Assembly (NCBI RefSeq): GCF_026571515.1
Contig: NW_026860085.1
Span: 1 to 64,000, forward strand
Source: Ruditapes philippinarum
Lineage: Eukaryota
Direction of reading: 5' to 3'
DNA length: 64,000 bases
Part shown: piece after piece, positions 22,152 through 33,661 of the stretch
Numbering within the stretch: position 1 is the first letter of the stretch
Layout of the letters: every line of letters begins with the position of its first letter
Translations under genes and position numbers: made by a program
The notes under the pieces: model-generated
What the model was told of the DNA's origin: nothing
Databases searched by the model: none
Seen by the model: the letters and a program-made list of their open reading frames with translations, nothing else

Positions 22152-24766
22152 TCAAGGAACTGCTGGAATTGCTGGACAGGTGGCGGCAGCTGAAATTGTA
22201 AACCACCAGTACTTCCTGCAGCAACATCCACGAGGTACCCATACATACCTCCATCTCCATGTTTGTAGCCACCCAAAAGAATCGATACCATTGCTCGTAT
22301 TAAAGACTATTCTGTAACAATATACTGGCAAACGGATCAACCTGAATGAAAACAAACGGTCTTTGATTTGATTTTTGTTACAATGTTATTTTCATAATTT
22401 TTGTTACAATGTATTTTTTTCCATTTTTGTTACAATGTTATTTTCATCATTTTTGTTACAATGTAATTTTCACCATTTTTGTTACAATGTTATATTTACC
22501 ATTTTGTGTTACAACCTTATTTTCACAGACAATAATGAGGTCATGAACGTTGCAATGGTGTTAAAACTGTGATTGTATGCATTTCCGTACAATTATACCG
22601 AGCTTACCATTGCTTTTGTACAAAACCATGTGTTTGAACTTTGATATCTTTGTTAGTAAAGCAATTAGCTATTGCAACTTAGAGAGGGATAAGTATACAT
22701 TGTATTACTGAAAATGACATAAATCTAAAATGTAGGTATAATGTACGAAAATAGAAGTAACAATTTGTCTGTGTTTTGAATATAAAATATTTGGTCAGTA
22801 GTCATTACCTGTAATCGGGGAAACATCTGTATCTAGAGTCGACCCAAGTGAACGGCCAGTAGCTCCAGTGACAGTGGCTTCTACAAACGAAATACAAAAA
22901 CATATATAATACAATTTAGTTCTCGTTGACATTTCATAATTAGTATCGTAGAAGTTTAGAAGTTAGACATATAGACATGTTAAGATATTAAGAGATTATT
23001 GTACTATATGAAACAAGCACTTCCTTGTCTATGGAAAAATTGACAACAAAGGATGTCAATGAAACCTACAAACTTATCTTTATTTTGTAAAATAAATCTA
23101 GAAATAAAAATAAGGATACACTTACGCTCCACAATATGTGCCCCAAACCCACCACGGTGACCACCAGTATTCCAGGATGACTGTACCATCAGACTGTAGG
23201 GACCAATATCTCCAGTACCATCTATAACGCCACAATACATACCACTTATACGGGCACGTTCTCCAGTAATATGGCAAAGCTCTAAAACAAACAAATAGCT
23301 CATAAATTATCGAAAGTGTAAATTATCGAAACTTGATATTACTTGATCGAATAATGATATTAATTAGTGCCACTTATCGAAACTTGATATTTATTAGTAT
23401 AAATCATTAAAACTTGATATAAATGTAAATGTTTGCTTTTTATTCTCTCCGGCAGAGAACATTTTTGTTTCTTATGATAATCACATAAAAATAAACTTCA
23501 TCTTTATTAAATCATATTACTTACGTTCACAGATTACAGATTCAAAATCATTGAAGTTATAATACTAATGAAATCAATATAGGCGTTGAAATTGAAACAC
23601 GTGAAATATTTCACAATAACAGTGTGTACTATTAAATTAATCCAGCGTTTTTGTAGTAAGGCATATATAGTAAGGTACATTACAAAATTCAATACGTTTC
23701 TAATTGAACTACAACTTACATGTCTAGATCTGCAGCAGAACCAACTGGTCCAAGATCTGCTTCTAAAATGTCACGTGACACTAGCTCTTCAGCTTTTGCT
23801 TCTATTGAATCACTGTAATCATAAATACATAGAGGATATTCAAGTTTTTTACTGTAAATACATAATTTTTATTTTCATCAAGTGGTATGAAAATAAATAT
23901 TTCATGAGTGGCGGTAGCCACGAGTAAAATATGTTAATTTTCATGCCACGAGTAAAATATGTTAATTTTCATGCCACAAGATGAAACTAAATCATGTATT
24001 TACAGAAAAAAAAATTGAATTTTCTGTTTATTATATACATTTTCCTATTTTTTGACATTAATTTGAAAGAATTTCCCTTAAATGTTGTGTACTGGCAAAA
24101 TTTAAAAGAAAGTAGTCCCGTCAAGACACCAGTGAAAATACGGAAAATATGTTTCACCACAGTGAAAAACACATTTTTACAGTGAAAATACGGAAAATGA
24201 AAATACGCATTTTATTTCATCAATATTTCTCAATATTTCATCTATAAGTATATAATAAATACGTGTATGAGTCTGTGTGTGTTATATTTTGGTTACCTTC
24301 ACCATCAGAAAAAAATTGGGCGAGTATGACTGCATAAGATGGTTCTGGATTAATGTTATAAGATAAAAAAAAAAGATTCTTATCAAACTACTTCAATGAA
24401 AACATTCAGTTTAGGTTTGTCTGTTTATGTTTCTATTAACATGCTTGTATCAGCAACACGTGATTAAAATGCAGTAAGAATTGGTTACCGCTTCCTAGAC
24501 GTTAATTCTGCCAATATGACCTGGTCTAGGTCTAGATACACGTTTCACCTCGTTAATTCTGCCAATATGTCCCGGCTCAGGTTGCCCTCGAGGGCTGACA
24601 GAGCTGCAGTGTATCTGAGTCTGATATTCATGCTGGCAGTCGCTTGTATCTGAAGATCGTGATCCATCGCGTCTTCCTCGCTAGGACAATCCGGCATGGT
24701 CTTCTGAGACGTCACATACTGTGTCCCAAACAACACCATGAATAAAAACAATGAGAAGCGTCCCAT
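22152..24766 (-). CDS. secreted Trp/Tyr/Arg-rich cystine-knot-type protein (Spaetzle/noggin/trunk-like topology) with acidic pro-region, ~242 aa
   Basis: Exons 24766-24549 (signal peptide MGRFSLFLFMVLFGTQYVTS), 23812-23720, 23281-23126, 22880-22809, 22341-22152 (TGA). All introns are phase 2, GT-AG. C-terminal domain: TCP...YCGASHC...YRCFPDY...VYC...VPRGCCC. AATAAA on the - strand at 22040-22035. An acceptor at 24771 implies a non-coding upstream exon. Confidence 0.85.
22372..22525. repeat. 28-bp tandem repeat (TTTTTGTTACAATGTTATTTTCATCA-like), ~5 copies
   Basis: Directly visible; explains spurious ORF 22375-22572. Confidence 0.85.
23828..24260. mobile_element. second member of the hairpin-headed element family (cf. 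2626-3810)
   Basis: ATAGAGGATATT start, tip GTGGC-GGTA-GCCAC (23908-23921), repeated AGTGAAAATAC tail. Confidence 0.55.
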
Positions 24767-24857
24767 TTTCCTGACAACAATACATGAAAATACGAGTTAA
24801 GAATGAATTTTTATTGGTAAAAAGCGTGCGTTTAATACAAATCTCAGTGGTATTTTT

Positions 24858-24916
24858 GAGGGCCTCATGGAAGATTGATATGTTTGTTCAAATGAGTTCT
24901 CTCGTTAAATAAAGTC

Positions 24917-24979
<63 letters not shown>
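24858..24979 (+). repeat. (TTA)n microsatellite, probably the 3' tail of a truncated LINE
   Basis: About 20 TTA units (24918-24979) preceded by AATAAA and a GAGGGCCTCATGGAAGATT...GAG segment resembling a CR1/L2-type 3' end. Confidence 0.75.
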
Positions 24980-26869
24980 TCACTTAATTTTGAAGAGGCC
25001 TTAGCCTCTTAATTTTGGAAAATGTTTCGCTAAAATTGCAAATTTAGGAAGTAAAAAAGCTTAACATTTTGGGAAAACTCCGTGATTTTAAAGAAAATTT
25101 CCATTTGGAAGAGGCCGGTTATGTAGGCCTCTGTTGAAGAGGTAAAAATCATTAAATCTTTACCTTATACATGTATTATTTTCATTTTCAGATTTTCAGA
25201 TTTTATATATAGCAAAGATTTTTATGCTGCTTATAAAATTTATATCATTAGAAATTTCTTTTTTCTTACAGCAATGGAAAATTTGATTTCTGAAGAAAAA
25301 AAAAATAAATAAACATTCATCCAATATTCCTTAAAAGATCATTTTATTTTGATACATGTTTACTTGTATTTGATATACATGTAGTTCGCTTTATATAAAC
25401 AACCTGTCAAGATGTCGTTAAGATATTAAAAAAAAGTTTTAACCCTTTTTATTTAATTAATTATAAATATAGAGTTGCAAAACAGCTACGAATACACGAC
25501 TTAAACATTGAAATACTGTAAATACATGTATTCTAACCAGTACATGTATAGGTTTTTAATTCATAACATGACATATTTCCAATTTAACTATCCAGTAATA
25601 AAGTAAATAATTATTAACGAAAAATTTCTAATGATACGAGGGTGGTTTCCCAATAATTCTTGGAATGCAAATACTCAAAGCGCTTCTTAAAGATTTTAAC
25701 TGATATTTAATACGCTATTGTCGATAGTACGAACAAAACATAAAAAAACAGCATGATATCATTTAATTTGACGGTAAAGCTACCTAGTAACGAAATACGG
25801 CCATTGTCCACGGCTTTGCGGGACAGCCCTCGTTTAATTAATTTCAGACATATTTTATTTTGGCAATATTATCATTATTATTAGTATTGATGACAATAAT
25901 GTTCTTGTCGAATTTAAAGCTCCTATTGAGATAGAATTCAATAATAAAAATTAAATTACAGTATTAATTGTGTAAAAGTTGGCAGCAATTAACATTTCAA
26001 AAACAAAGTACCAATCATATATTATACAAACTACCACTAAAATATCGCTGAATATGTAAGCGGTGCAAAAATAGTGTAAAGATAACTTACATTATTCTTA
26101 TTTCCATTCAAATCACACTCCAAGATGATTACAAGCCCCGTGTGCTTAGCCTTTTAATCGCACTAGAAAGTAGTCCGGCAGGCACGTTGCAAATTTTGAT
26201 TGGAGCTTTTACAGTCATCACAAATAATGGTAAGATGAACCCTATCTGGACGTTGAAAGCTGTTCCTTTGAACTTTTTTGTACACAACATGGGAGGTTCT
26301 TGCTGCCTATGCTATTGTCACCCTACCCCGCCCCACGCCCTCTTCTATAAGCTGTATTGAATGATCCTTTTACGTCAGTTTATAATATTTTTGATATTTT
26401 TTATGTTTTAATTAGTGAACAGGGTACTTCTAAATCATATATCGAATTAAAGAAGTTTTTCACGCAATGATATAAAGGTGTAGTATTATTGAGTACAAAT
26501 GAAATATGGCAAAAGAAAACATATTTTGATAATTTTAGTCAAACATATCACAATTATAATCAGAAAATGGCGAGACTGTTAGTGATAATCGAGGCGTGTT
26601 TAAAGAATATTTTATCAAAGGTTAGTAGGGCATTTAACCATCATTTACCATGATTGGATAAAGACAGTGTATATGTTATATTTTCTATCTATCAATTATC
26701 TAACGATCCTCCCTTTATTGTTTTTTTTTTGTATTAGCCTTAGCGTAGTGATTTCTGAACTGCTGGATTACTAATCATGTTAATAATTGCGGTGATAAAT
26801 CGATTGTGAAAATGAAGGATAACATAACAGACTTAGAAAAGAATCTGAAAATAATTACAAACACCACTT

Positions 26870-29800
26870 ATGGAAGTTTTGGTAAGTTTTTTTATACATT
26901 CATTTTTATTCTTTTTTAAACTTTTGGGCTTCTAAAGAGCTATTCTACTGAGATTACGTTATGTTTCAATAATTGAGTGAATTGAATACTTTTGGCTATA
27001 GTGGCTGATTTTGAACACATTTGTTTGACGTGTTGTCGCTAGCGACACCACGACAAAGCGCCAAACGGCGCAGTGTCGCATTGTCGTCTTGTCGCTAACG
27101 AAGCACACCAAACGCCGTGCTGCCTGTTATCACGACCACATTGTCGCTCGGCTCAAATCGAAGGATTGGCTGTTTGTATATATATTATTAGTTATATATA
27201 TATTTTGACAAGCTATATATGGCCCTATATAAACGATTGTTTGTAAATAAAACCCGAGCCGCTAGGCTACGGTTATATTGCAAACAACCGTTTATATATG
27301 GAATAAACTGTTTGCTCAAATAAGCTATGTATTTATATATAACACCGCATTTAAAATACCGGAGTCTTTGAATACATTGTATATACTTAATAATAAATTG
27401 AAACGCTATTTTTCAATTGATTCGTTTTAGAGATGTTTTGCAAACACTTGGTTAAATCGAACTTGAAAAAATGGCGACCGGGTCAAGAAAAAATATCTGG
27501 TGATTTTAAATGTTGTCCAAATTTTTAGCACATTATACTTCATTTGAACTTAAACAATAACTAGTCGCTGCGTAAAAAATTTTCATTAAATACCAATTCA
27601 ACGTATAATCAGGTCCAATAAGGTCCTGATTTAGATCAGATTGTTGAATAAAATAAACAAATCTGGGATATTCTTATGTTCAACATATAATAATTGCAAT
27701 AACATAACTTGACATTGTTTTTAATTTAAGTGTTGCTTTTCAGAGAGCGTTATGTATCTTTATGACGTGCATCAGTAATGTACAGACATATCCTATAGAA
27801 CACGACATTAACAGCCGCCAAGTCACACGATGTTTATTACCGCAAATACAGTTACTTAATGGTATTCTTGTTCCCGACAGACCAATGCCACGGTACGATT
27901 TCTCTCAATTAACAATGTTGAAGGTAATCAAAATATAACGGTCTTTTAAATTTTATTTTTATCGGAAGAAATTGCAGCAAAATGACGTTCAATAACATCA
28001 TAGATATAATGATAATGAAATACAATATTGAATTGTTTGTTACATGTTAGAAATCAATTTAAAATAAAAAAAATGACAAGTTGGCAGAGATACAGGTATG
28101 CCAATAATGTTTGGCTCTCGGTGTGTTAAGAATCAAGATCACTGATTAAAGGATTTCTGACCCTTATGACTGTGTGTTTGAAACTTGCAAAACCGTTAAA
28201 TTCTTTCACACGTGTAGTCTATACAGCTTTATATGAAAACCGGTGACCCATAATACCCGCGTCCTTAATACGCCTGCATCCTCCCTCGCACAGGTGTCAG
28301 TTTACCTGAACACTGTTCCGAACTTAACCAAAGAAACATATTGTTGAATTATTGCAGAAAGGACTATAAGAATGCATTACGTAAAGAACCAAATGGTAGA
28401 GAGATTAATGCCATGATCAGACAGACGAAAGAAGAGCTGGGACGTGTAGCTGAGTATGGCAATCAACCTTTTAAACAATATGAGCCGCGTCACGACAAAA
28501 CCAACATAGTGCGTTTGCGAACAGCATGGATCCAGACCAGCCTGCGCATCCGCGCAGTCTGATCAGGATCCATGCTGTTCGCTATCAGTTTCTCTACTTG
28601 TAATAGGGTTTTTAAGCGAACAGCATGGATCCTGATCAGACTGCACTGACGAGCAGGCTGGTCTGAATCCATGCTGGTCGCAAACCCATTATGTTGGTTT
28701 TGTCGCGACACGGCTCAATTATAACACTTTCCAATTTTCACATTTAGTGCCAGAATCTGTAGATTATTGTAATTCATTCAACTATCGATGCTTAATGAAG
28801 AGATAATAGAAATTAGATGTCACGTGGTTCATTTAAAGTTTTGTTCTTTATGAAAGTATACTTTGTATACCTAGTAGCGCTTATGTCAATAGTAGAATCA
28901 ATATTGTTATTTTTAGTGTTCTCTTTCAGTTCCGCCTAAACATAATTATTTTCAGCAGCTTTCTTCCAGATTAATTCTAATTTTTATGAAAATTGCAAGT
29001 GTATTTAAAGGTAAAAATTGTAAAGTGAACACAAAAGTAATTTACACATTGCAAACATGTAATGTATATGATTTAGGTTTGTTGGTGAAAAATGCCGAAG
29101 CTTCCGGCAAATATTATTTATTTAATTTTTGGGGATGTCTAGAAAAAACATCATGTATCGTATACATAGACCGATTTATCGTTTGTTTGCATGGTAACCA
29201 GTTTAGAAAAAGAGTTTGACAAGAATTCCGCCCTCTGCTTCCCTCCTTTGTGCAAGTCGAGAATCCGTGTCATAACCAACTGGAGGGTTTTAGGCACAGA
29301 CTGCTGGGCCATACAGCCTGTTATCTGGAGACAATGCAAGGAAAAGTGAGAGAAAAATGACACTAAATCAGTTATCCTAAAATTATATAAAACTGAAATG
29401 ATTTATTATTTACTTCTTAATTTTAAAGCTGTAATTTTAAAGTTTTTTCTCTCTTATTGATAAGATCCGTGAAAGAGATCTTCTAGAAAAATGACTAAAA
29501 TGTAAAGTCGGACTATTTTCTAAATGATTCTGGTCAGAGGTATATAATTGTTAACAATTCTCTGTTCTCACGACTTGTTCATTCTCGTACTTCTTAGCGA
29601 AAACTGAGGCAAAAAATAAACCTAACCACAATATACTTTGTGATATATATTTATATCTATGTTGTTTCAACTAAAACATGGAACACTTAACATGCAAATT
29701 TTGATGCATCTTTCTCTTTCTCACTGAGATATACGGTTACATTTCAACTTGAAAAAAAGTTTTTGCTGATTTTGGAATATTAATTTCAGACCATTGGATG

Positions 29801-29964
29801 CGTTTTCGTGTGTAAACGAGATGTCTACGACAGGGCTAGGTTATACTTGTCAGTCAGAATATATGCCGGTAACGGTGTTGGTATATTGTCAACATGGTGT
29901 GCCAGCGTTCCGCTACATGTCTGTTTATGTCTCATTTAAATGCTCACGTAGGTTCATGTTATAA
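26870..29964 (+). CDS. secreted cystine-knot-type protein, divergent paralog of 22152-24766 (~214 aa; possibly decaying)
   Basis: Exons 26870-26881 (MEVL), 27744-27861 (RALCIFMTCISNVQT-YP..., signal peptide), 28294-28453, 28970-29010, 29207-29345, 29790-29964 (TAA) give 645 nt with no stop. C-terminal LCKS...DCW...RQCKEKPLDAFSC...YTCQSEY...LVYC...VYVSFKCSR aligns with the neighbouring gene. The middle exon boundaries are uncertain. Confidence 0.7.
27226..27298. repeat. foldback hairpin (tip AGCC-GCTA-GGCT)
   Basis: TATATAAACGATTGTTTGTAAATA / TATTGCAAACAACCGTTTATATA arms. Confidence 0.7.
28482..28716. mobile_element. 235-bp palindromic MITE (Sola-like), copy 4
   Basis: Same family; central spacer is in the opposite orientation to copies 1-3. 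Confidence 0.9.
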
Positions 29965-30672
29965 TAATATTTATACCTGTCCGTTTATAACAAATGTGAA
30001 GTAAATCTTTCAGTTGGTCAAAAAGATATAATGATATTGTTTATTAAGAATCATGGCGTGGCTATTTTAGTTTAATGGCATTCAATTCCACCAATCAATA
30101 ACTCACATTAAGCTGATCAATAACACGGAAAGTGACGAAACATGCCGGACTTGTACGAGCCTGTGCTACCAGGGTTTTCCAAATAGAAAAGACCCTGCGC
30201 GGAATAAACATTCTCTTAAAGCAAAGTATATATTTCAACAACCATTGTATTTCTCTGAATCTGTTGTTGTTGTTGTTTTAACATATTTTGCCAAAAAAAA
30301 TACAAGACGCACTGAAAAATAAAGCATTATATATACATAAAATTATTACGCAGGAACACAAACCTGTCATGCTTTCTTATACAGCTACATGTATATAACA
30401 TTAATTTATTTTAATTCTTTTCTATTTTTCAGTAAAGAAGTATTGCTGTCAGAACATTTAATACAGAACACTGATTAATATGATTCTTATCAAACTGTCA
30501 AGTTAAAATAAAAGTAATCAAACAACTTTCTGTGTTGTTGTTTATTGAAATTTGGAGCACCTTATGCTTATATAAATAAGCTCTGCTCTACCTGAAGCTA
30601 GAAAAAAATTATGTTATAGATAAATTATCTATGTGATGTACAGATAATTATCAACCTTAACCAGCTGGAACT

Positions 30673-33661
30673 GAGCCAGGCCAGTCTCCGTTTCGTCTGA
30701 CCTGTGATAGAGCCAAGCCAGCCTTTGTTTTGTCTGACCTGTGATAGAGCCAGGTCAGCCTCCGTTTATTCTGACCTGTGATAGAGCCAGGCCAGCCACC
30801 GTGTAATTTGACCTGTGATAGGGCCGGACCAGCCTCCGTTTAGTCTGATCTGTTATAGAGCCAGGCCAGCCTCCATTAAGTCTGATCTGTATCAGAGCAA
30901 GGCCAGACTCCGTTTAGTCTGATCTGTAATAGTCAGGCCAGCCTCCGTTTAGTCTGATCCGTGATAGAGCCAGGCCAGCCTCGGTTTAGTCTGACCTGTG
31001 ATAGAGCCAGGCCAGCCTCCGTTTAGTCTGACCTGTGATAGAGCCAGGCCAGCCATCGTTAAGTCTGACCTGTGATCGAGCCTGGCCAGCCTCCGTTTAG
31101 TCTGACCTGTTATAGAACCTGACCAGCCTCCGTTTAGTCTGACCTGTGATAGAGCCAGGCAAGCCTCCGTTTAGTCTGACCTATGATAGAGCAAGACCAG
31201 CCTTCGTTTAGTCTGACCTGTGATAGAGCCAGGCCAGCCTCCGTTTAGTCTGACCTTTGATAGAGCAAGACCAGCCTCCGTTTAGTCTGACCTATGATCG
31301 AACCTGACCAGCTTCCGTTTAGTCTGACCTGTGATAGAGCCAGACCAGCCTCCGTTTAGTCTGACATATGATAGAGCAAGACCAGCCTCCGTTTAGTTTG
31401 ACCTGTGATAGAACCTGACCAGCCTCCATTTAGTCTGACCTGTGATAGAGCTAGGCCAGCCTCCGTTTAGTCTGACCTGTGATAGAGCCAGGCCAGCCTC
31501 TGTTCGTCTGACTTGTGATAGAACCTGACCAGCCTCCGTTTAGTCTGACTTTTGATAGAACCTGACCAGCCTTCGTTTAGTCTGACCTTTGATAGAGCCA
31601 GACCTGCCTCCGTTTAGTCTGACCTGTGATAGAGCCTGACCAGTCTCCGTTTAGTCTGACCTGTGATACAGCCAGGCAATCCTCTGTTTAGTCTGACCTA
31701 TGATAGAGTAGAGCAAGACCAGCCTTCGTTTAGTCTGACCTGTGATAGAGCAAGACCAGCCTTCGTTTAGTCTGACCTGTGATGGAGCAAGGCCAGCCTT
31801 CGTTTAGTCTGACCTCTAATAGAGCCAGGCCAGCCTTCGTTAAGTCTGACCTGTGATAGAGCCAGGCCAGCCTTCGTTAAGTCTGACCTGTGATAGAGCC
31901 AGGCAATCCTCTGTTTAGTCTGACCTATGATAGAGCAAGACCAGCCTTCGTTTAGTCTGACCTGTAATAGAGCCAGGCCAGCCTCCGTTTAGTCTGACCT
32001 ATGATAGAGCAAGACCAGCCTCCGTTTAGTCTGACCTGTGATAGAGCCAGGCCAGCCTTCGTTTAGTCTGACCTGTGAGAGCCAGGCAATCCTCTGTTTA
32101 GTTTGACCTATGATAGAGCAAGACCAGCCTTCGTTTAGTCTGACCTGTGATAGACCCAGGCCAGCCTCCGTTTAGTCTGACCTTTGATAGAGCAAGACCA
32201 GCGTTCGTTTAGTCTGACCTGTTATAGAGCCAGACCAGCTTTCGTTTAGTCTGACCTGTGATAGAGCCAGGCCATTTTCTGTTAAGTCTGACCTGTGAAA
32301 GAGCCAGACCAGCTTCTGTTAAGTCTGACCTGTGATAGAGCCAGGCCATCCTCTGTTTAGTCTCACCTGTGATAGAGCCAGACCAGCCTACGTTTAGTCT
32401 GACCTGTGATAGAGCCAGACCAGCCTACTTTAATCTGACTTGTGATAGAGCCAGGCCAGCCTCAGTTTAGTCTGACCTGTGATAGAGCCAGGCCATCCTC
32501 TGTTAAGTTTGACCTGTGATAGAGCCAGGCCAGCCTCCGTTTAGTCTGACCTATGAGAGAGCAAGACCAGCCTTCGTTTAGTCTGACCTGTGATAGAGCC
32601 AGGCCAGCCTCCGTTTAGTCTGACCTATGATAGAGCAAGACCAGCCTTCGTTTAGTCTGACCTGTGATAGACCCAGGCCAGCCTCCGTTTAGTCTGACCT
32701 TTGATAGAGCAAGACCAGCGTTCGTTTAGTCTGACCTGTGATAGAGCCAGACCAGCTTTCGTTTAGTCTGACCTGTGATAGAGCCAGGCCAGCCTTCGTT
32801 TAGTCTGACCTGTGATAGAGCAAGACCAGCCTTCGTTTAGTCTGACTTGTGATAGAGCCAGACCAGCCTTCGTTTAGTCTGACGTGTGATAGAGCCAGAC
32901 CAGCCTCCGTTTAGTCTGACCTGTGATAGAGCAAGACCAGCCTCCGTTTAGTCTGACTTGTGTTAGAGCCAGACCAGCCTCCGTTTAGTCTGACCTATGA
33001 TAGAGCAAGACCAGCCTTCGTTTAGTCTGACTTGTGATAGAGCCAGACCAGCCTCCGTTTAGTCTGACTTGTGATAGAGCCAGACCAGCCTCCGTTTAGT
33101 CTGACCTGTGATAGAGCCAGACCAGCCTCCGTTTAGTCTGACCTCTAATAGAGCCAGGCCAGCCTTCGTTTAGTCTGACCTGTGATAGAGCCAGACAAGC
33201 CTCCATTTAGTCTGACCTGTGATAGAGTCTGACCAGCCTCCATTAGTCTAACCTGCAATAGAGCCAGGCCAGCCTTGTGTAGTCTGACCTGTGATAGAGC
33301 CAGACCAGCCTACTTTAGTCTAACCTTCAATAGAGCCAGGCCAGCCTCCGTTTAGTTTTGACCTGTGATAGAGCCAGGCCATCCTCTGTTAAGTCTGACC
33401 TGTGATAGAGCCAGGCCAGCCTCTGTTAAGTCTGACCTGTGATAGAGCCAGGCCATCCTCTGTTTAGTCTGACCTATGATAGAGCAAGACCAGCCTTCGT
33501 TTAGTCTGACCTGTGATAGAGCCAGACCAGCCTCCGTTTAGTCTGACCTGTGACAGAGCAAGGCCATCCTCTGTTAAGTCTGACCTGAGATAGAACCAGG
33601 CCATCCTGTTAAGTCTGACATGTGATAGAGCCAGGCCATCCTCTGTTAAGTCTGACCTGTG
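30673..33661. repeat. 37-bp satellite array, ~80 copies (GAGCCAGGCCAGCCTCCGTTTAGTCTGACCTGTGATA)
   Basis: Uninterrupted head-to-tail units; period 37 (GTGATAGAGC at 30961 and 30998). Confidence 0.97.

What the first reader, a model, noticed from the sequence alone, without database searches (positions are those of the whole stretch)
22152..29964. Hidden head-to-head pair of divergent secreted cystine-knot (Spaetzle/noggin-like) genes
Seen: two spliced genes start about 2.1 kb apart in opposite directions (ATG 24766 on -, ATG 26870 on +). Each has a signal peptide, a pro-region and a C-terminal Cys domain. The C-termini align: YRCFPDYRLIRLPVYC...WRWRYVWVPRGCCCR versus YTCQSEYMPVTVLVYC...FRYMSVYVSFKCSRR. 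Both have a phase-2 intron 2-3 codons after the second knot Cys, and a weak pro-region match (RLRYTAAL / RKDYKNAL). Established: the C1...C2-xn-C3...C4...CxC pattern behind a pro-domain is the growth-factor cystine knot of Spaetzle, neurotrophins, noggin, trunk/PTTH and IL-17, which act as dimers. Inference: an inverted duplication produced a co-regulated, possibly heterodimer-forming ligand or effector pair from an uncharacterised mollusc family. The ORF track misses most of the + gene and translates one exon of the - gene in the wrong frame.
Basis: partly seen in the sequence, partly recalled or inferred. Interest (0 to 1): 0.88.

Follow-up and report, generated by a model that had tools for sequence, protein, structure and literature searches.

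The report
Head-to-head clam knot-cytokine-like gene pair
Two neighbouring Manila clam genes that start back to back are real, spliced and expressed; they encode secreted cysteine-rich proteins that probably have the cystine-knot cytokine fold, closest to invertebrate IL-17, and one is extremely rich in tryptophan and very highly expressed, but both are already in RefSeq as unnamed genes and their function is untested.

Summary
The two genes exist. My exon coordinates reproduce two RefSeq proteins of Ruditapes philippinarum exactly: LOC132758796 (minus strand, 249 aa) and LOC132758797 (plus strand, 195 aa), both "uncharacterized". Spliced RNA contigs confirm four plus-gene junctions, an alternative plus first exon and a minus 5' exon. 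The transcript starts lie only about 0.36-0.73 kb apart.

- The minus gene has an upstream in-frame ATG at 26107.
- The plus gene ends in a sixth exon (30433-30461), giving ...KCSLKKYCCQNI rather than ...KCSRRFML.
- The pro-region match is chance.

No Pfam, PDB-sequence or hhalign hit is significant, and the AF2 models are poor. The knot-cytokine reading rests on four weaker lines:
- the cysteine framework;
- two predicted long beta-hairpins bracketed by those cysteines;
- ESM Atlas neighbours, all in the Spaetzle/IL-17/NGF/noggin clan;
- an Atlas-model TM of 0.53-0.57 to an IL-17A-like cluster.

The framework fits invertebrate IL-17 better than Spaetzle or noggin. I found two more Tyr-rich paralogues in the genome that keep the mollusc IL-17 CxCxxC motif, and one homologue from another source.

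Paralogy of the two neighbours is probable (profile versus shuffles 1/500; shared phase-2 introns) but not proven. The heterodimer test gave no answer.

The parts
26091..26127 (-). Minus gene (LOC132758796), short 5' exon with the upstream in-frame ATG at 26107 (MEIRIM-). The 5' end near 26127 is estimated from depth.
   Evidence: GT..AG joint 24770|26091 in X1 (depth 8539), and an X4 loose end matching the exon end. Needed to reproduce P0001.
24549..24770 (-).
   Evidence: Contig depth is about 1e5 in X1 and 8-20 thousand in X4, and the donor at 24549 is shown by a loose end.
23720..23812 (-). Minus gene exon 3: second part of the pro-region, with phase-2 introns on both sides.
   Evidence: Collinear with the transcript-derived homologue P0004.
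23126..23281 (-). Minus gene exon 4: C1 (T-C-P-Y), the Trp-rich first beta-hairpin, and C2.
22809..22880 (-). Minus gene exon 5: C3 to C4 (SHC...RYRCFPDY). The longest ORF here is in another frame.
22152..22341 (-). Minus gene exon 6: second hairpin with the extra Cys (VYC), the CCC motif, the RKYWW tail, the last Cys, and the stop codon.
26128..26489 (.). Shared intergenic region between the two divergent transcript starts; putative bidirectional promoter. A TTAAAAGG box lies about 30 nt upstream of the minus start.
   Evidence: Transcript ends inferred. Sequence. Promoter function is inferred, not tested.
26490..26620 (+). Plus gene alternative first exon (ATG 26567, MARLLVIIEACLKNILSK), in frame with exon 2.
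   Evidence: Joint 26620|27744 in X1 (depth 116.5). Translation.
26857..26881 (+). Plus gene (LOC132758797) first exon, ATG at 26870 (MEVL).
   Evidence: Joint 26881|27744 in X4. That contig starts with adapter sequence at 26857.
27744..27892 (+). Plus gene exon 2: rest of the signal peptide and the first part of the pro-region.
   Evidence: Joints in X1 and X4..
28358..28453 (+). Plus gene exon 3: second part of the pro-region.
   Evidence: Joint 27892|28358 in X1 and X4. Loose end at 28453 continues into exon 4.
28481..28717 (.). MITE-like inverted repeat (103-nt arms, 90% complementary) inside plus intron 3; not part of the coding sequence.
   Evidence: Very high depth on both strands in all four runs.
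29202..29345 (+). Plus gene exon 4: first four Cys of the domain (ALC, PLC, TDC, RQC).
   Evidence: Loose end at 29202 carries the end of exon 3. Joint 29345|29790 in X1..
29790..29947 (+). Plus gene exon 5: FSC, YTC, VYC, FKC.
   Evidence: Depth falls to zero after about 30021 in X1.
30433..30461 (+). Plus gene exon 6: (L)KKYCCQNI and the stop codon. Known from the RefSeq model only.
   Evidence: The junction was not covered by the reads laid (the stretch ended at 30400).

Best explanation
SHOWN. The region holds two real, expressed, divergently transcribed Manila clam genes, RefSeq LOC132758796 and LOC132758797. They share a short intergenic region of 0.36-0.73 kb. Each encodes a hydrophobic N-terminus, a predicted helical middle region and a C-terminal disulfide-rich domain.

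INFERRED: FOLD. The C-terminal domain has the cystine-knot cytokine fold. Two long beta-hairpins are clamped by C1-C4, C2-C5 and C3-C6, in the three-disulfide arrangement typical of invertebrate IL-17.

INFERRED: MINUS GENE. It belongs to a small, fast-evolving, aromatic-rich family with at least three loci in this genome and one homologue elsewhere. Its mature domain is 14% Trp, 12% Tyr and net +10, behind a net -12 acidic pro-region, and its mRNA is very abundant in some samples. The acidic pro-region would mask or chaperone the cationic knot domain until secretion or processing. The domain would then act outside the cell as a disulfide-stabilised, probably dimeric, binding protein. Given its abundance and Trp/Arg-rich hairpins, I think an effector that binds microbes or matrix is more likely than a classical low-level cytokine.

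INFERRED: PLUS GENE. It is a strongly diverged paralogue of ordinary composition, expressed about 100-fold lower from the same promoter region, and is the more cytokine-like of the two.
For: GENES
- The exon models reproduce P0001 and P0002 exactly. Both are RefSeq proteins of R. philippinarum.
- Spliced joints and loose ends are seen in two RNA contig sets.
- Both genes are present in X1 and X4 and nearly silent in X21 and X23. In X21 the first mates lie on the minus strand, as expected for a plus-strand RNA.

FOLD
- Conserved cysteines C120, C161, C166, C182, C195, C226-228 and C242 are shared by P0001 and P0004, which are 36% identical (E 7e-50).
- AF2 secondary structure places two long hairpins exactly between these cysteines.
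- All ten best named Atlas neighbours are Spaetzle, IL-17, NGF or noggin clusters (0.81-0.88), and the Atlas model has TM 0.53/0.57 to an IL-17A-like cluster.

IL-17-LIKE FRAMEWORK
- A clam IL-17 alignment shows S-x-C-P-W, C-x-C-x-x-C, C-x-P-V, a further C, and V-G-C-T-C.
- The minus family shows T-C-P, C-x4-C (C-A-C-N-Y-C in the two paralogues), R-C-F-P, a further C, and G-C-C-C.
- Published descriptions give CPW and six to eight Cys for invertebrate IL-17 (PMC8353272) and a three-disulfide ancestral type (PMC11087794).
- The clam IL-17 profile beats composition-preserving shuffles: 1/600, 8/600 and 8/600. Spaetzle-like and noggin profiles do not.

PARALOGY
- The P0002 domain against the family profile scores 1/500.
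- Both genes have phase-2 introns between the two pro-region exons, before the Cys domain, and between two domain cysteines.
- C4-to-next-Cys spacing is identical (13) and the tails are alike, CCCRKYWW and CSLKKYCC.

COMPOSITION AND CHARGE.
Against: - No significant sequence or profile match to any known family: Pfam none at E<=10, PDB sequences none, hhalign E 0.04-0.7 against clam IL-17, Spaetzle-like and noggin profiles, and an IL-17 HMM no better than shuffles for P0004.
- My AF2 models are unreliable (pLDDT 36.8 and 32.7). Foldseek and VIA searches with them found nothing.
- Atlas scores are below 0.9 and its model has pLDDT 0.48.
- The plus protein lacks C-P, C-x4-C and C-x-C.
- BLASTP between the neighbours gives E 0.062.
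- The family profile against single IL-17 sequences averages only z 1.4, against 0.7-0.8 for Spaetzle-like and noggin.
- Canonical clam IL-17, Spaetzle-like and noggin domains lie in one exon. This family has two introns in the domain.
- There is no basic cleavage site at the pro-region/domain border.
- The two Tyr-rich paralogues have no detectable plus-like partner.
- Contig depth is a poor measure of expression, and the tissues are unknown.
Confidence: 0.6

Rival explanations
1. The domains are Spaetzle/neurotrophin-type (or noggin-type) knots, as the reader titled them. They would signal through Toll-like or Trk-like receptors, or bind BMP, rather than being IL-17-like.
For: - Atlas feature neighbours include Spaetzle and NGF clusters at 0.87-0.88 and noggin at 0.85.
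- The overall spacing C1-x40-C2-x4-C3-x15-C4...CC is similar to the Spaetzle pattern I recall from memory.
- The C-x-x-x-Y motif after C4 is also Spaetzle-like, again from memory.
Against: - The Pfam Spaetzle, NGF and noggin models do not match the proteins or the window's exons.
- Profiles of the clam's own Spaetzle-like and noggin genes give no signal by hhalign or by the shuffle test (z -0.7 to 2.3).
- The only structural neighbour above TM 0.5 is an IL-17A-like cluster.
- C-P after C1, C-x-C-x-x-C and the extra Cys after strand 3 are IL-17 features in this clam.
- There is no Arg at the pro-region/domain border for Spaetzle-type activation.
Confidence: 0.15
2. The cysteine pattern is convergent. 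The proteins have a new disulfide-rich beta-hairpin fold and serve as abundant structural, adhesive or antimicrobial secretory products unrelated to cytokines.
For: - No significant homology to any family.
- Very high contig depth, about 1e5 in X1.
- Extreme Trp/Tyr/Arg content and the pairing of an anionic pro-region with a cationic domain, as in antimicrobial peptide precursors (the comparison is from general knowledge).
- The family is taxonomically restricted.
- The structure models are of low confidence.
Against: - All ten best named Atlas neighbours fall in one clan, and a structural neighbour is IL-17-like.
- The hairpins are bracketed by cysteines in the knot order.
- The CxCxxC motif in the paralogues equals the mollusc IL-17 motif.
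- An effector function is compatible with a knot fold, so only the "new fold" part competes with the best explanation.
Confidence: 0.2
3. The two neighbours are unrelated genes that merely share a bidirectional promoter. Their resemblance reflects the small alphabet of Cys-rich secreted proteins.
For: - BLASTP E 0.062 and hhalign E 0.11-0.36.
- The pro-regions are not similar.
- The two alignment registers disagree on which Cys are equivalent.
- The plus gene has no paralogue anywhere in the genome, and the Tyr-rich paralogues have no such partner.
Against: - Shuffle tests give 6/600 and 1/500.
- The domain order is the same in both.
- Three phase-2 introns sit at architecturally equivalent places.
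- C4-x12-C spacing is identical, and the motifs Y-x-C-x-x-[DE]-Y and [RK]-K-Y after the last knot Cys are shared.
Confidence: 0.27

Closest known systems
Invertebrate (three-disulfide, 'T1A'-type) IL-17 family, PF06083
   Same: - Secreted protein with a C-terminal knot domain.
- C1 followed by Pro (C-P-W in IL-17; C-P-Y or C-P-H here).
- C-x4-C, written C-x-C-x-x-C in clam IL-17 and in the two Tyr-rich paralogues.
- C4-x-P, an extra Cys after strand 3, and a final C-x-C (PMC8353272; PMC11087794).
- The family is expanded in this clam, with at least 40 loci.
- The Atlas model has TM 0.53/0.57 to an IL-17A-like cluster.
   Different: - No PF06083 hit.
- Hairpin 1 is about 20 residues longer and packed with Trp/Tyr.
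- There is a roughly 80-residue acidic helical pro-region.
- Two introns lie inside the domain, whereas canonical clam IL-17 domains are single-exon.
- The mRNA level is very high.
- The plus protein lacks C-P, C-x4-C and C-x-C.
Spaetzle / neurotrophin family (PF16077, PF00243)
   Same: - A pro-domain followed by a C-terminal knot domain.
- Similar overall Cys spacing.
- Atlas feature neighbours at 0.87-0.88.
   Different: - No HMM or profile match, including to the clam's own five Spaetzle-like genes.
- No basic activation site at the domain border.
Vertebrate IL17A/IL17F neighbouring genes, whose products form homo- and heterodimers (from general knowledge)
   Same: Two adjacent knot-cytokine-like paralogues with apparently shared regulation.
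   Different: - Here the genes are head to head with a shared promoter region.
- They are far more diverged.
- They are expressed at very different levels.
- There is no evidence of heterodimers (one search gave no answer).
Crustacean female sex hormone (CFSH), an IL-17-fold hormone reported to bind shrimp IL-17 receptors (PMC11087794)
   Same: A precedent for an invertebrate IL-17-fold protein with a precursor region used as an abundant secreted factor outside classical immunity.
   Different: No sequence comparison was made here. The relationship is by analogy only.

Membership tests
IL-17 (PF06083) | Match to the Pfam IL17 model above its gathering score (24 bits) | tested here: not met
   No Pfam family at E<=10 for P0001, P0002 or P0004. 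A genome scan with PF06083 finds 46 loci, none in this window. An HMM of 16 clam IL-17 domains scores the three proteins no better than, or only marginally better than, shuffles.
IL-17 (PF06083) | Invertebrate IL-17 cysteine framework: C1 in C-P-W, C2-x4-C3 (C-x-C-x-x-C), C4-x-P, C5-x-C6 | tested here: met
   Met at the pattern level for the minus gene and its family: T-C-P-Y/H, C-x4-C (C-A-C-N-Y-C in the paralogues), R-C-F-P, C-C-C. Not met for the plus gene, which has no C-P, has C-x9-C, and ends C-x5-C-C.
IL-17 (PF06083) | IL-17 fold by structure comparison | tested here: inconclusive
   The Atlas model (pLDDT 0.48) has TM 0.53/0.57 to an IL-17A-like cluster over 90 residues. My AF2 models have pLDDT 36.8 and 32.7, and Foldseek and VIA searches with them found nothing.
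IL-17 (PF06083) | Binding to an IL-17 receptor ectodomain | not testable with these tools
   Needs a binding assay.
Spaetzle (PF16077) | Match to the Pfam Spaetzle model, or profile similarity to Spaetzle-like genes | tested here: not met
   Searches give no match. hhalign against the clam's five Spaetzle-like genes gives E 0.12-0.25 over irrelevant columns. Shuffle test z -0.6 to 2.3.
Spaetzle (PF16077) | Protease activation site directly before the knot domain | tested here: not met
   The border reads ...AADLDIALPYY in P0001 and ...MQDLSIAFPHY in P0004, with no basic residue.
Noggin (PF05806) | Match to the Pfam noggin model and a C-terminal C-x-C-x-C end | tested here: not met
   Searches give no match. 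hhalign against the two clam noggins gives E 0.14-0.37. The proteins end CCC plus a 21-residue tail, or C-x5-CC-QNI.
Cystine-knot cytokine superfamily (fold level) | Two long beta-hairpins, each bracketed by knot cysteines in the order C1-hairpin-C2..C3-loop-C4-hairpin-C5xC6 | tested here: inconclusive
   Predicted strands 124-139/144-159 lie between C120 and C161. Strands 185-201/210-224 lie between C182 and C226. The model is of low confidence. All ten best named Atlas neighbours are in this clan, but the scores are below 0.9.
Cystine-knot cytokine superfamily (fold level) | Knot disulfide topology (1-4, 2-5, 3-6) | not testable with these tools
   Needs disulfide mapping or a confident structure.

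The most novel reading that the evidence does not exclude
A lineage-restricted, aromatic-rich (Trp or Tyr) offshoot of the IL-17-type knot fold has been turned from a signal into a mass-produced secreted effector. An acidic pro-region masks a cationic Trp/Arg hairpin domain, which acts for example on microbial surfaces or matrix. It is kept under one bidirectional promoter with a diverged, low-level partner that may modulate it or pair with it.
Probability: 0.2. Interest if true: 0.7.

Novelty: new variant of a known kind. Interest (0 to 1): 0.45.

Why it matters
Bivalves have greatly expanded IL-17 and other knot-cytokine repertoires, and most members have no known function. If the fold assignment holds, this family shows how far the scaffold can drift: 14% Trp, long hairpins and introns inside the domain put it beyond the reach of every family model.

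It also offers a concrete, highly expressed candidate for a non-cytokine use of the fold in clam defence or secretion. The compact head-to-head arrangement gives a simple system for testing co-regulation of two diverged paralogues.

In practical terms, it puts a tentative name on two RefSeq "uncharacterized" genes and points to two further loci for which my searches returned no database protein.

Tried and rejected
- Pfam on single exons and on full proteins: nothing.
- Atlas search with the plus last exon alone: no useful neighbour.
- The search for homologous proteins three times (P0001, P0002, alignment A3): only the queries themselves and P0004.
- PDB sequence search: nothing.
- hhalign against clam Spaetzle-like, noggin and IL-17 alignments, and between the two neighbours: never significant.
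- AF2 of the minus protein with a 3-row alignment, and of the plus protein alone: pLDDT 36.8 and 32.7.
- Complex prediction on the two domains as a heterodimer: verdict "no answer", score 0.00, partner fold uncertain. This is no evidence either way.
- Weak own-genome hit L006: repeat noise. L004 looked like noise at first because I read the wrong frame. In the right frame it is a true paralogue.
- Search for a plus-like partner upstream of the C12909 paralogue: none.
- Paper searches for the LOC and XP numbers and for Trp-rich clam proteins: nothing relevant.
Full report
WHAT IS THERE

The window is AT-rich animal DNA. A representative search returned two proteins that carry RefSeq names from the Manila clam Ruditapes philippinarum:
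- XP_060606477.1, LOC132758796, 249 aa (P0001)
- XP_060606478.1, LOC132758797, 195 aa (P0002)

Both are "uncharacterized". So the pair is hidden from an ORF track but not from the public annotation.

GENE MODELS

I derived the exons from the sequence. Joining them in a local script reproduces P0001 and P0002 letter for letter.

- Minus gene: 26107(ATG)-26091, 24770-24549, 23812-23720, 23281-23126, 22880-22809, 22341-22152.
- Plus gene: 26870-26881, 27744-27892, 28358-28453, 29202-29345, 29790-29947, 30433-30461.
- All introns are GT-AG.
- The plus gene has phase 0, then three phase-2 introns, then phase 1.

RNA EVIDENCE

I had one read-laying run, limited to 6,000 letters. I spent it on 24450-30400, because the plus model was the doubtful one.

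Runs X1 and X4 are Logan contig sets labelled only as guessed RNA. They contain GT..AG joints, so they hold cDNA.
- Joints seen: 26881|27744 (X4), 27892|28358 (X1, X4), 29345|29790 (X1).
- The junction 28453|29202 is shown by matching loose ends on both sides (X1).
- An alternative first exon, 26490-26620, is joined to 27744 (X1). It carries an in-frame ATG at 26567.
- For the minus gene, the donor at 24549 is shown by a loose end that matches exon 3.
- A joint 24770|26091 reveals a short 5' exon. Its in-frame ATG at 26107 gives the MEIRIMK extension of the RefSeq protein.

The depth in the 26042-26240 bin implies that this exon is only about 37 nt long. The minus transcript therefore starts near 26127. 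The plus transcripts start near 26490 and 26857; the X4 contig begins there with adapter sequence. The two genes thus share an intergenic region of about 0.36-0.73 kb.

Expression:
- Minus exon depth is about 1e5 in X1 and 8-20 thousand in X4. Plus exons reach a few hundred to a thousand in X1 and about 100-290 in X4.
- Both genes are almost silent in the raw-read RNA runs X21 and X23.
- In X21 the few plus-gene reads have the first mate on the minus strand, as expected for a plus-strand RNA.
- This is compatible with co-expression, but four runs of unknown tissue cannot show it. Contig depth is also a poor measure of expression.

Not seen directly: minus junctions 2 to 5, and the plus junction 29947|30433, which lay outside the stretch. 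They rest on the RefSeq models. For the minus gene they also rest on the gap-free collinearity with P0004, which comes from a 985-nt transcript-like contig.

- Transcript starts are closer than 2.1 kb.
- The plus C-terminus is ...FKCSLKKYCCQNI, not ...FKCSRRFML. The real tail resembles the minus tail better (CCCRKYWW against CSLKKYCC).
- The pro-region match is at chance level (z -0.19).

THE FAMILY

Searches of about 1.8 and 5.8 billion proteins found only one relative of the minus protein, P0004/P0005: 262 aa, 36% identity, E 7e-50. They found none for the plus protein.

P0004 is not encoded in this genome; its best hits here are the minus exons at 40-45% identity. It therefore comes from another source.

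That same search exposed two further paralogues, at C15479 and C12909.
- They have the same three domain exons and the same phase-2 introns.
- A first exon at the C12909 locus carries a signal peptide and the conserved motif C-x-x-E-E-D/E-A.
- They are Tyr-rich rather than Trp-rich.
- They keep every conserved cysteine and read C-A-C-N-Y-C where the minus gene reads C-G-A-S-H-C.

These two spliced paralogues have no single reference. I joined them only inside local scripts for alignment and sent them to no search tool. The same holds for the window's own models: all tool searches used single exons by reference, or the database proteins P0001 and P0002.

COMPOSITION

| Protein | Part | Trp | Tyr | Arg | Net charge |
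|---|---|---|---|---|---|
| P0001 (minus) | domain | 14.4% | 11.5% | 9.4% | +10 |
| P0001 (minus) | pro-region | 0% | 1.2% | 4.9% | -12 |
| P0004 | domain | 9.6% | 11.6% | 8.9% | +14 |
| P0004 | pro-region | 0% | 3.2% | 4.3% | -12 |
| P0002 (plus) | domain | 2.9% | 5.8% | 4.9% | +7 |
| P0002 (plus) | pro-region | 0% | 2.7% | 11.0% | +1 |

The plus protein is ordinary in composition.

WHAT FOLD

Standard tests are negative.
- Pfam: nothing.
- PDB sequences: nothing.
- The Pfam Spaetzle, noggin and IL17 models find the clam's canonical genes (5, 2 and more than 40 loci) but not this window.
- hhalign against alignments of those clam genes is never significant.

The positive evidence is weaker but consistent.
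1. The conserved cysteines of the minus family fall in the order C1, long stretch, C2-x4-C3, loop, C4, long stretch, C-C-C.
2. Even the poor AF2 model predicts helices in the pro-region and four long strands, 124-139/144-159 and 185-201/210-224. That is one hairpin between C120 and C161 and one between C182 and C226.
3. The Atlas language-model search with residues 110-249 returned, as its ten best named neighbours, only Spaetzle, IL-17, NGF and noggin clusters (0.81-0.88). The Atlas's own model has TM 0.53/0.57 over 90 residues to an IL-17A-like cluster. The tool warns that scores under 0.9 are leads, and that a third of shuffled proteins also get ten-of-ten agreement.
4. The clam's own IL-17 domains show S-x-C-P-W, C-x-C-x-x-C, C-x-P-V, another Cys after the next strand, and V-G-C-T-C. 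The minus family shows T-C-P-Y/H, C-x4-C or C-x-C-x-x-C, R-C-F-P, another Cys 13 positions on, and G-C-C-C. Published work describes CPW and six to eight cysteines as the invertebrate IL-17 signature (PMC8353272) and a three-disulfide ancestral type (PMC11087794).
5. I ran a gap-tolerant profile alignment of my own, with gap costs fixed beforehand and composition-preserving shuffles as the null. The clam IL-17 profile reached 1/600 for P0001, 8/600 for P0004 and 8/600 for P0002. Spaetzle-like and noggin profiles gave z between -0.7 and 2.3. For P0001 the best path was in a shifted register, so this number is less meaningful than it looks. The reverse test (family profile against single IL-17 sequences) averaged only z 1.4, against 0.7-0.8 for the other two families.

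I therefore file the domain under the cystine-knot cytokine fold with moderate confidence. I call IL-17 the nearest family by framework, but I do not call the proteins IL-17 family members.

ARE THE TWO NEIGHBOURS RELATED?

- BLASTP gives E 0.062 and hhalign E 0.11-0.36.
- Against shuffles, the plus domain scores 6/600 with the two-species profile and 1/500 with the four-member family profile.
- All methods align the second half the same way: Y-x-C-x-x-[DE]-Y...V-Y-C...R-Y-x-x-V-x-V...C...[RK]-K-Y.
- The first half is ambiguous. The Smith-Waterman register (GTYC = GTDC) does not.
- The two genes also share phase-2 introns between the two pro-region exons and just before the Cys domain.
- Against a conserved pair: the plus gene has no other copy in the genome, and the Tyr-rich paralogue at C12909 has no such partner within 14 kb upstream.

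I put paralogy at roughly 70%.

HOW IT LIKELY WORKS

Shown: two co-located, divergently transcribed, spliced and expressed genes for Cys-rich proteins with hydrophobic N-termini.

Inferred: secretion; a helical pro-region that in the minus family is strongly acidic and would neutralise the cationic domain; a knot-clamped two-hairpin domain; and dimer formation, as in other knot cytokines.

No basic processing site lies at the border (DL-x-IA-x-P is conserved instead), so cleavage of the pro-region is unproven.

Because the minus mRNA is so abundant and its hairpins are covered with Trp, Tyr and Arg, I think an effector or binding role is more likely than a classical cytokine role. The plus gene is the more cytokine-like. 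A heterodimer cannot be the main form of the minus product, given the depth ratio. The complex prediction gave no answer.

VERDICT

This is a real and moderately interesting pair. The "Spaetzle/noggin" label is not supported, and "IL-17-like knot" is the better lead. Novelty lies in the extreme composition, the small hidden family and the head-to-head arrangement, not in the existence of the genes.

Noticed in passing
G000:C15479:343-2786 (+) and G000:C12909:106008-110188 (+) (loci L032, L031): Two further paralogues of the minus gene, 84-88% identical to each other in DNA. They are Tyr-rich, have the same exon structure and keep the mollusc IL-17 motif C-x-C-x-x-C. My protein searches returned no database entry for them, so they may be unannotated.
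   Followed up: partly
window 30673-33661: A 37-bp minisatellite of about 81 copies (86% matches) lies directly downstream of the plus gene's last exon. It explains the GC rise at 30-34 kb.
   Followed up: no
window 28481-28717: A MITE-like inverted repeat (103-nt arms) sits in plus intron 3. It has huge depth on both strands in all four RNA runs, with many chimeric joints, so it is a very abundant transcribed repeat family in this clam.
   Followed up: partly
window 24702-24703 (minus exon 2, just after the signal peptide): The X4 contig carries 50 letters in place of 2, an in-frame 48-nt insertion allele in the pro-region (depth 7899).
   Followed up: no
window 27777-27842 and 29208-29275: The X4 and X1 transcripts differ from the reference at many plus-gene coding positions (9 of 149 letters in exon 2). 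By their codon positions, several of these changes alter the amino acid, so the pro-region looks highly polymorphic.
   Followed up: no
window 24489-24582: The end of minus exon 2 is duplicated in the start of the following intron (CATATTGGCAGAATTAACG occurs twice), as another first-stage note says. An X4 contig covers it unspliced at low depth (77.7).
   Followed up: partly
window 22371-22525 and 24918-24979: A 26-bp tandem repeat (5.9 copies) lies in the last minus intron, and a (TTA)21 run lies upstream of the minus coding exon.
   Followed up: no
G000:C9544, C9033, C9574, C3775 (loci L023-L026): These clam IL-17-domain genes have lost the ring cysteines (the end reads G-Y/F-T-S/A instead of G-C-T-C) but keep C-P-W and C-x-P-V. 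This matches another first-stage note on an 'inverted' IL-17 knot.
   Followed up: no
G000:C15325:255828-256058 (locus L028): A divergent IL-17-like gene just above the Pfam cut-off has Y-T-C-F-P-Q-Y-Y-P-L-T-V-L. This is strikingly like both window genes after C4 (single-comparison E 0.005 and 0.009, chosen after the fact from 16 sequences).
   Followed up: partly
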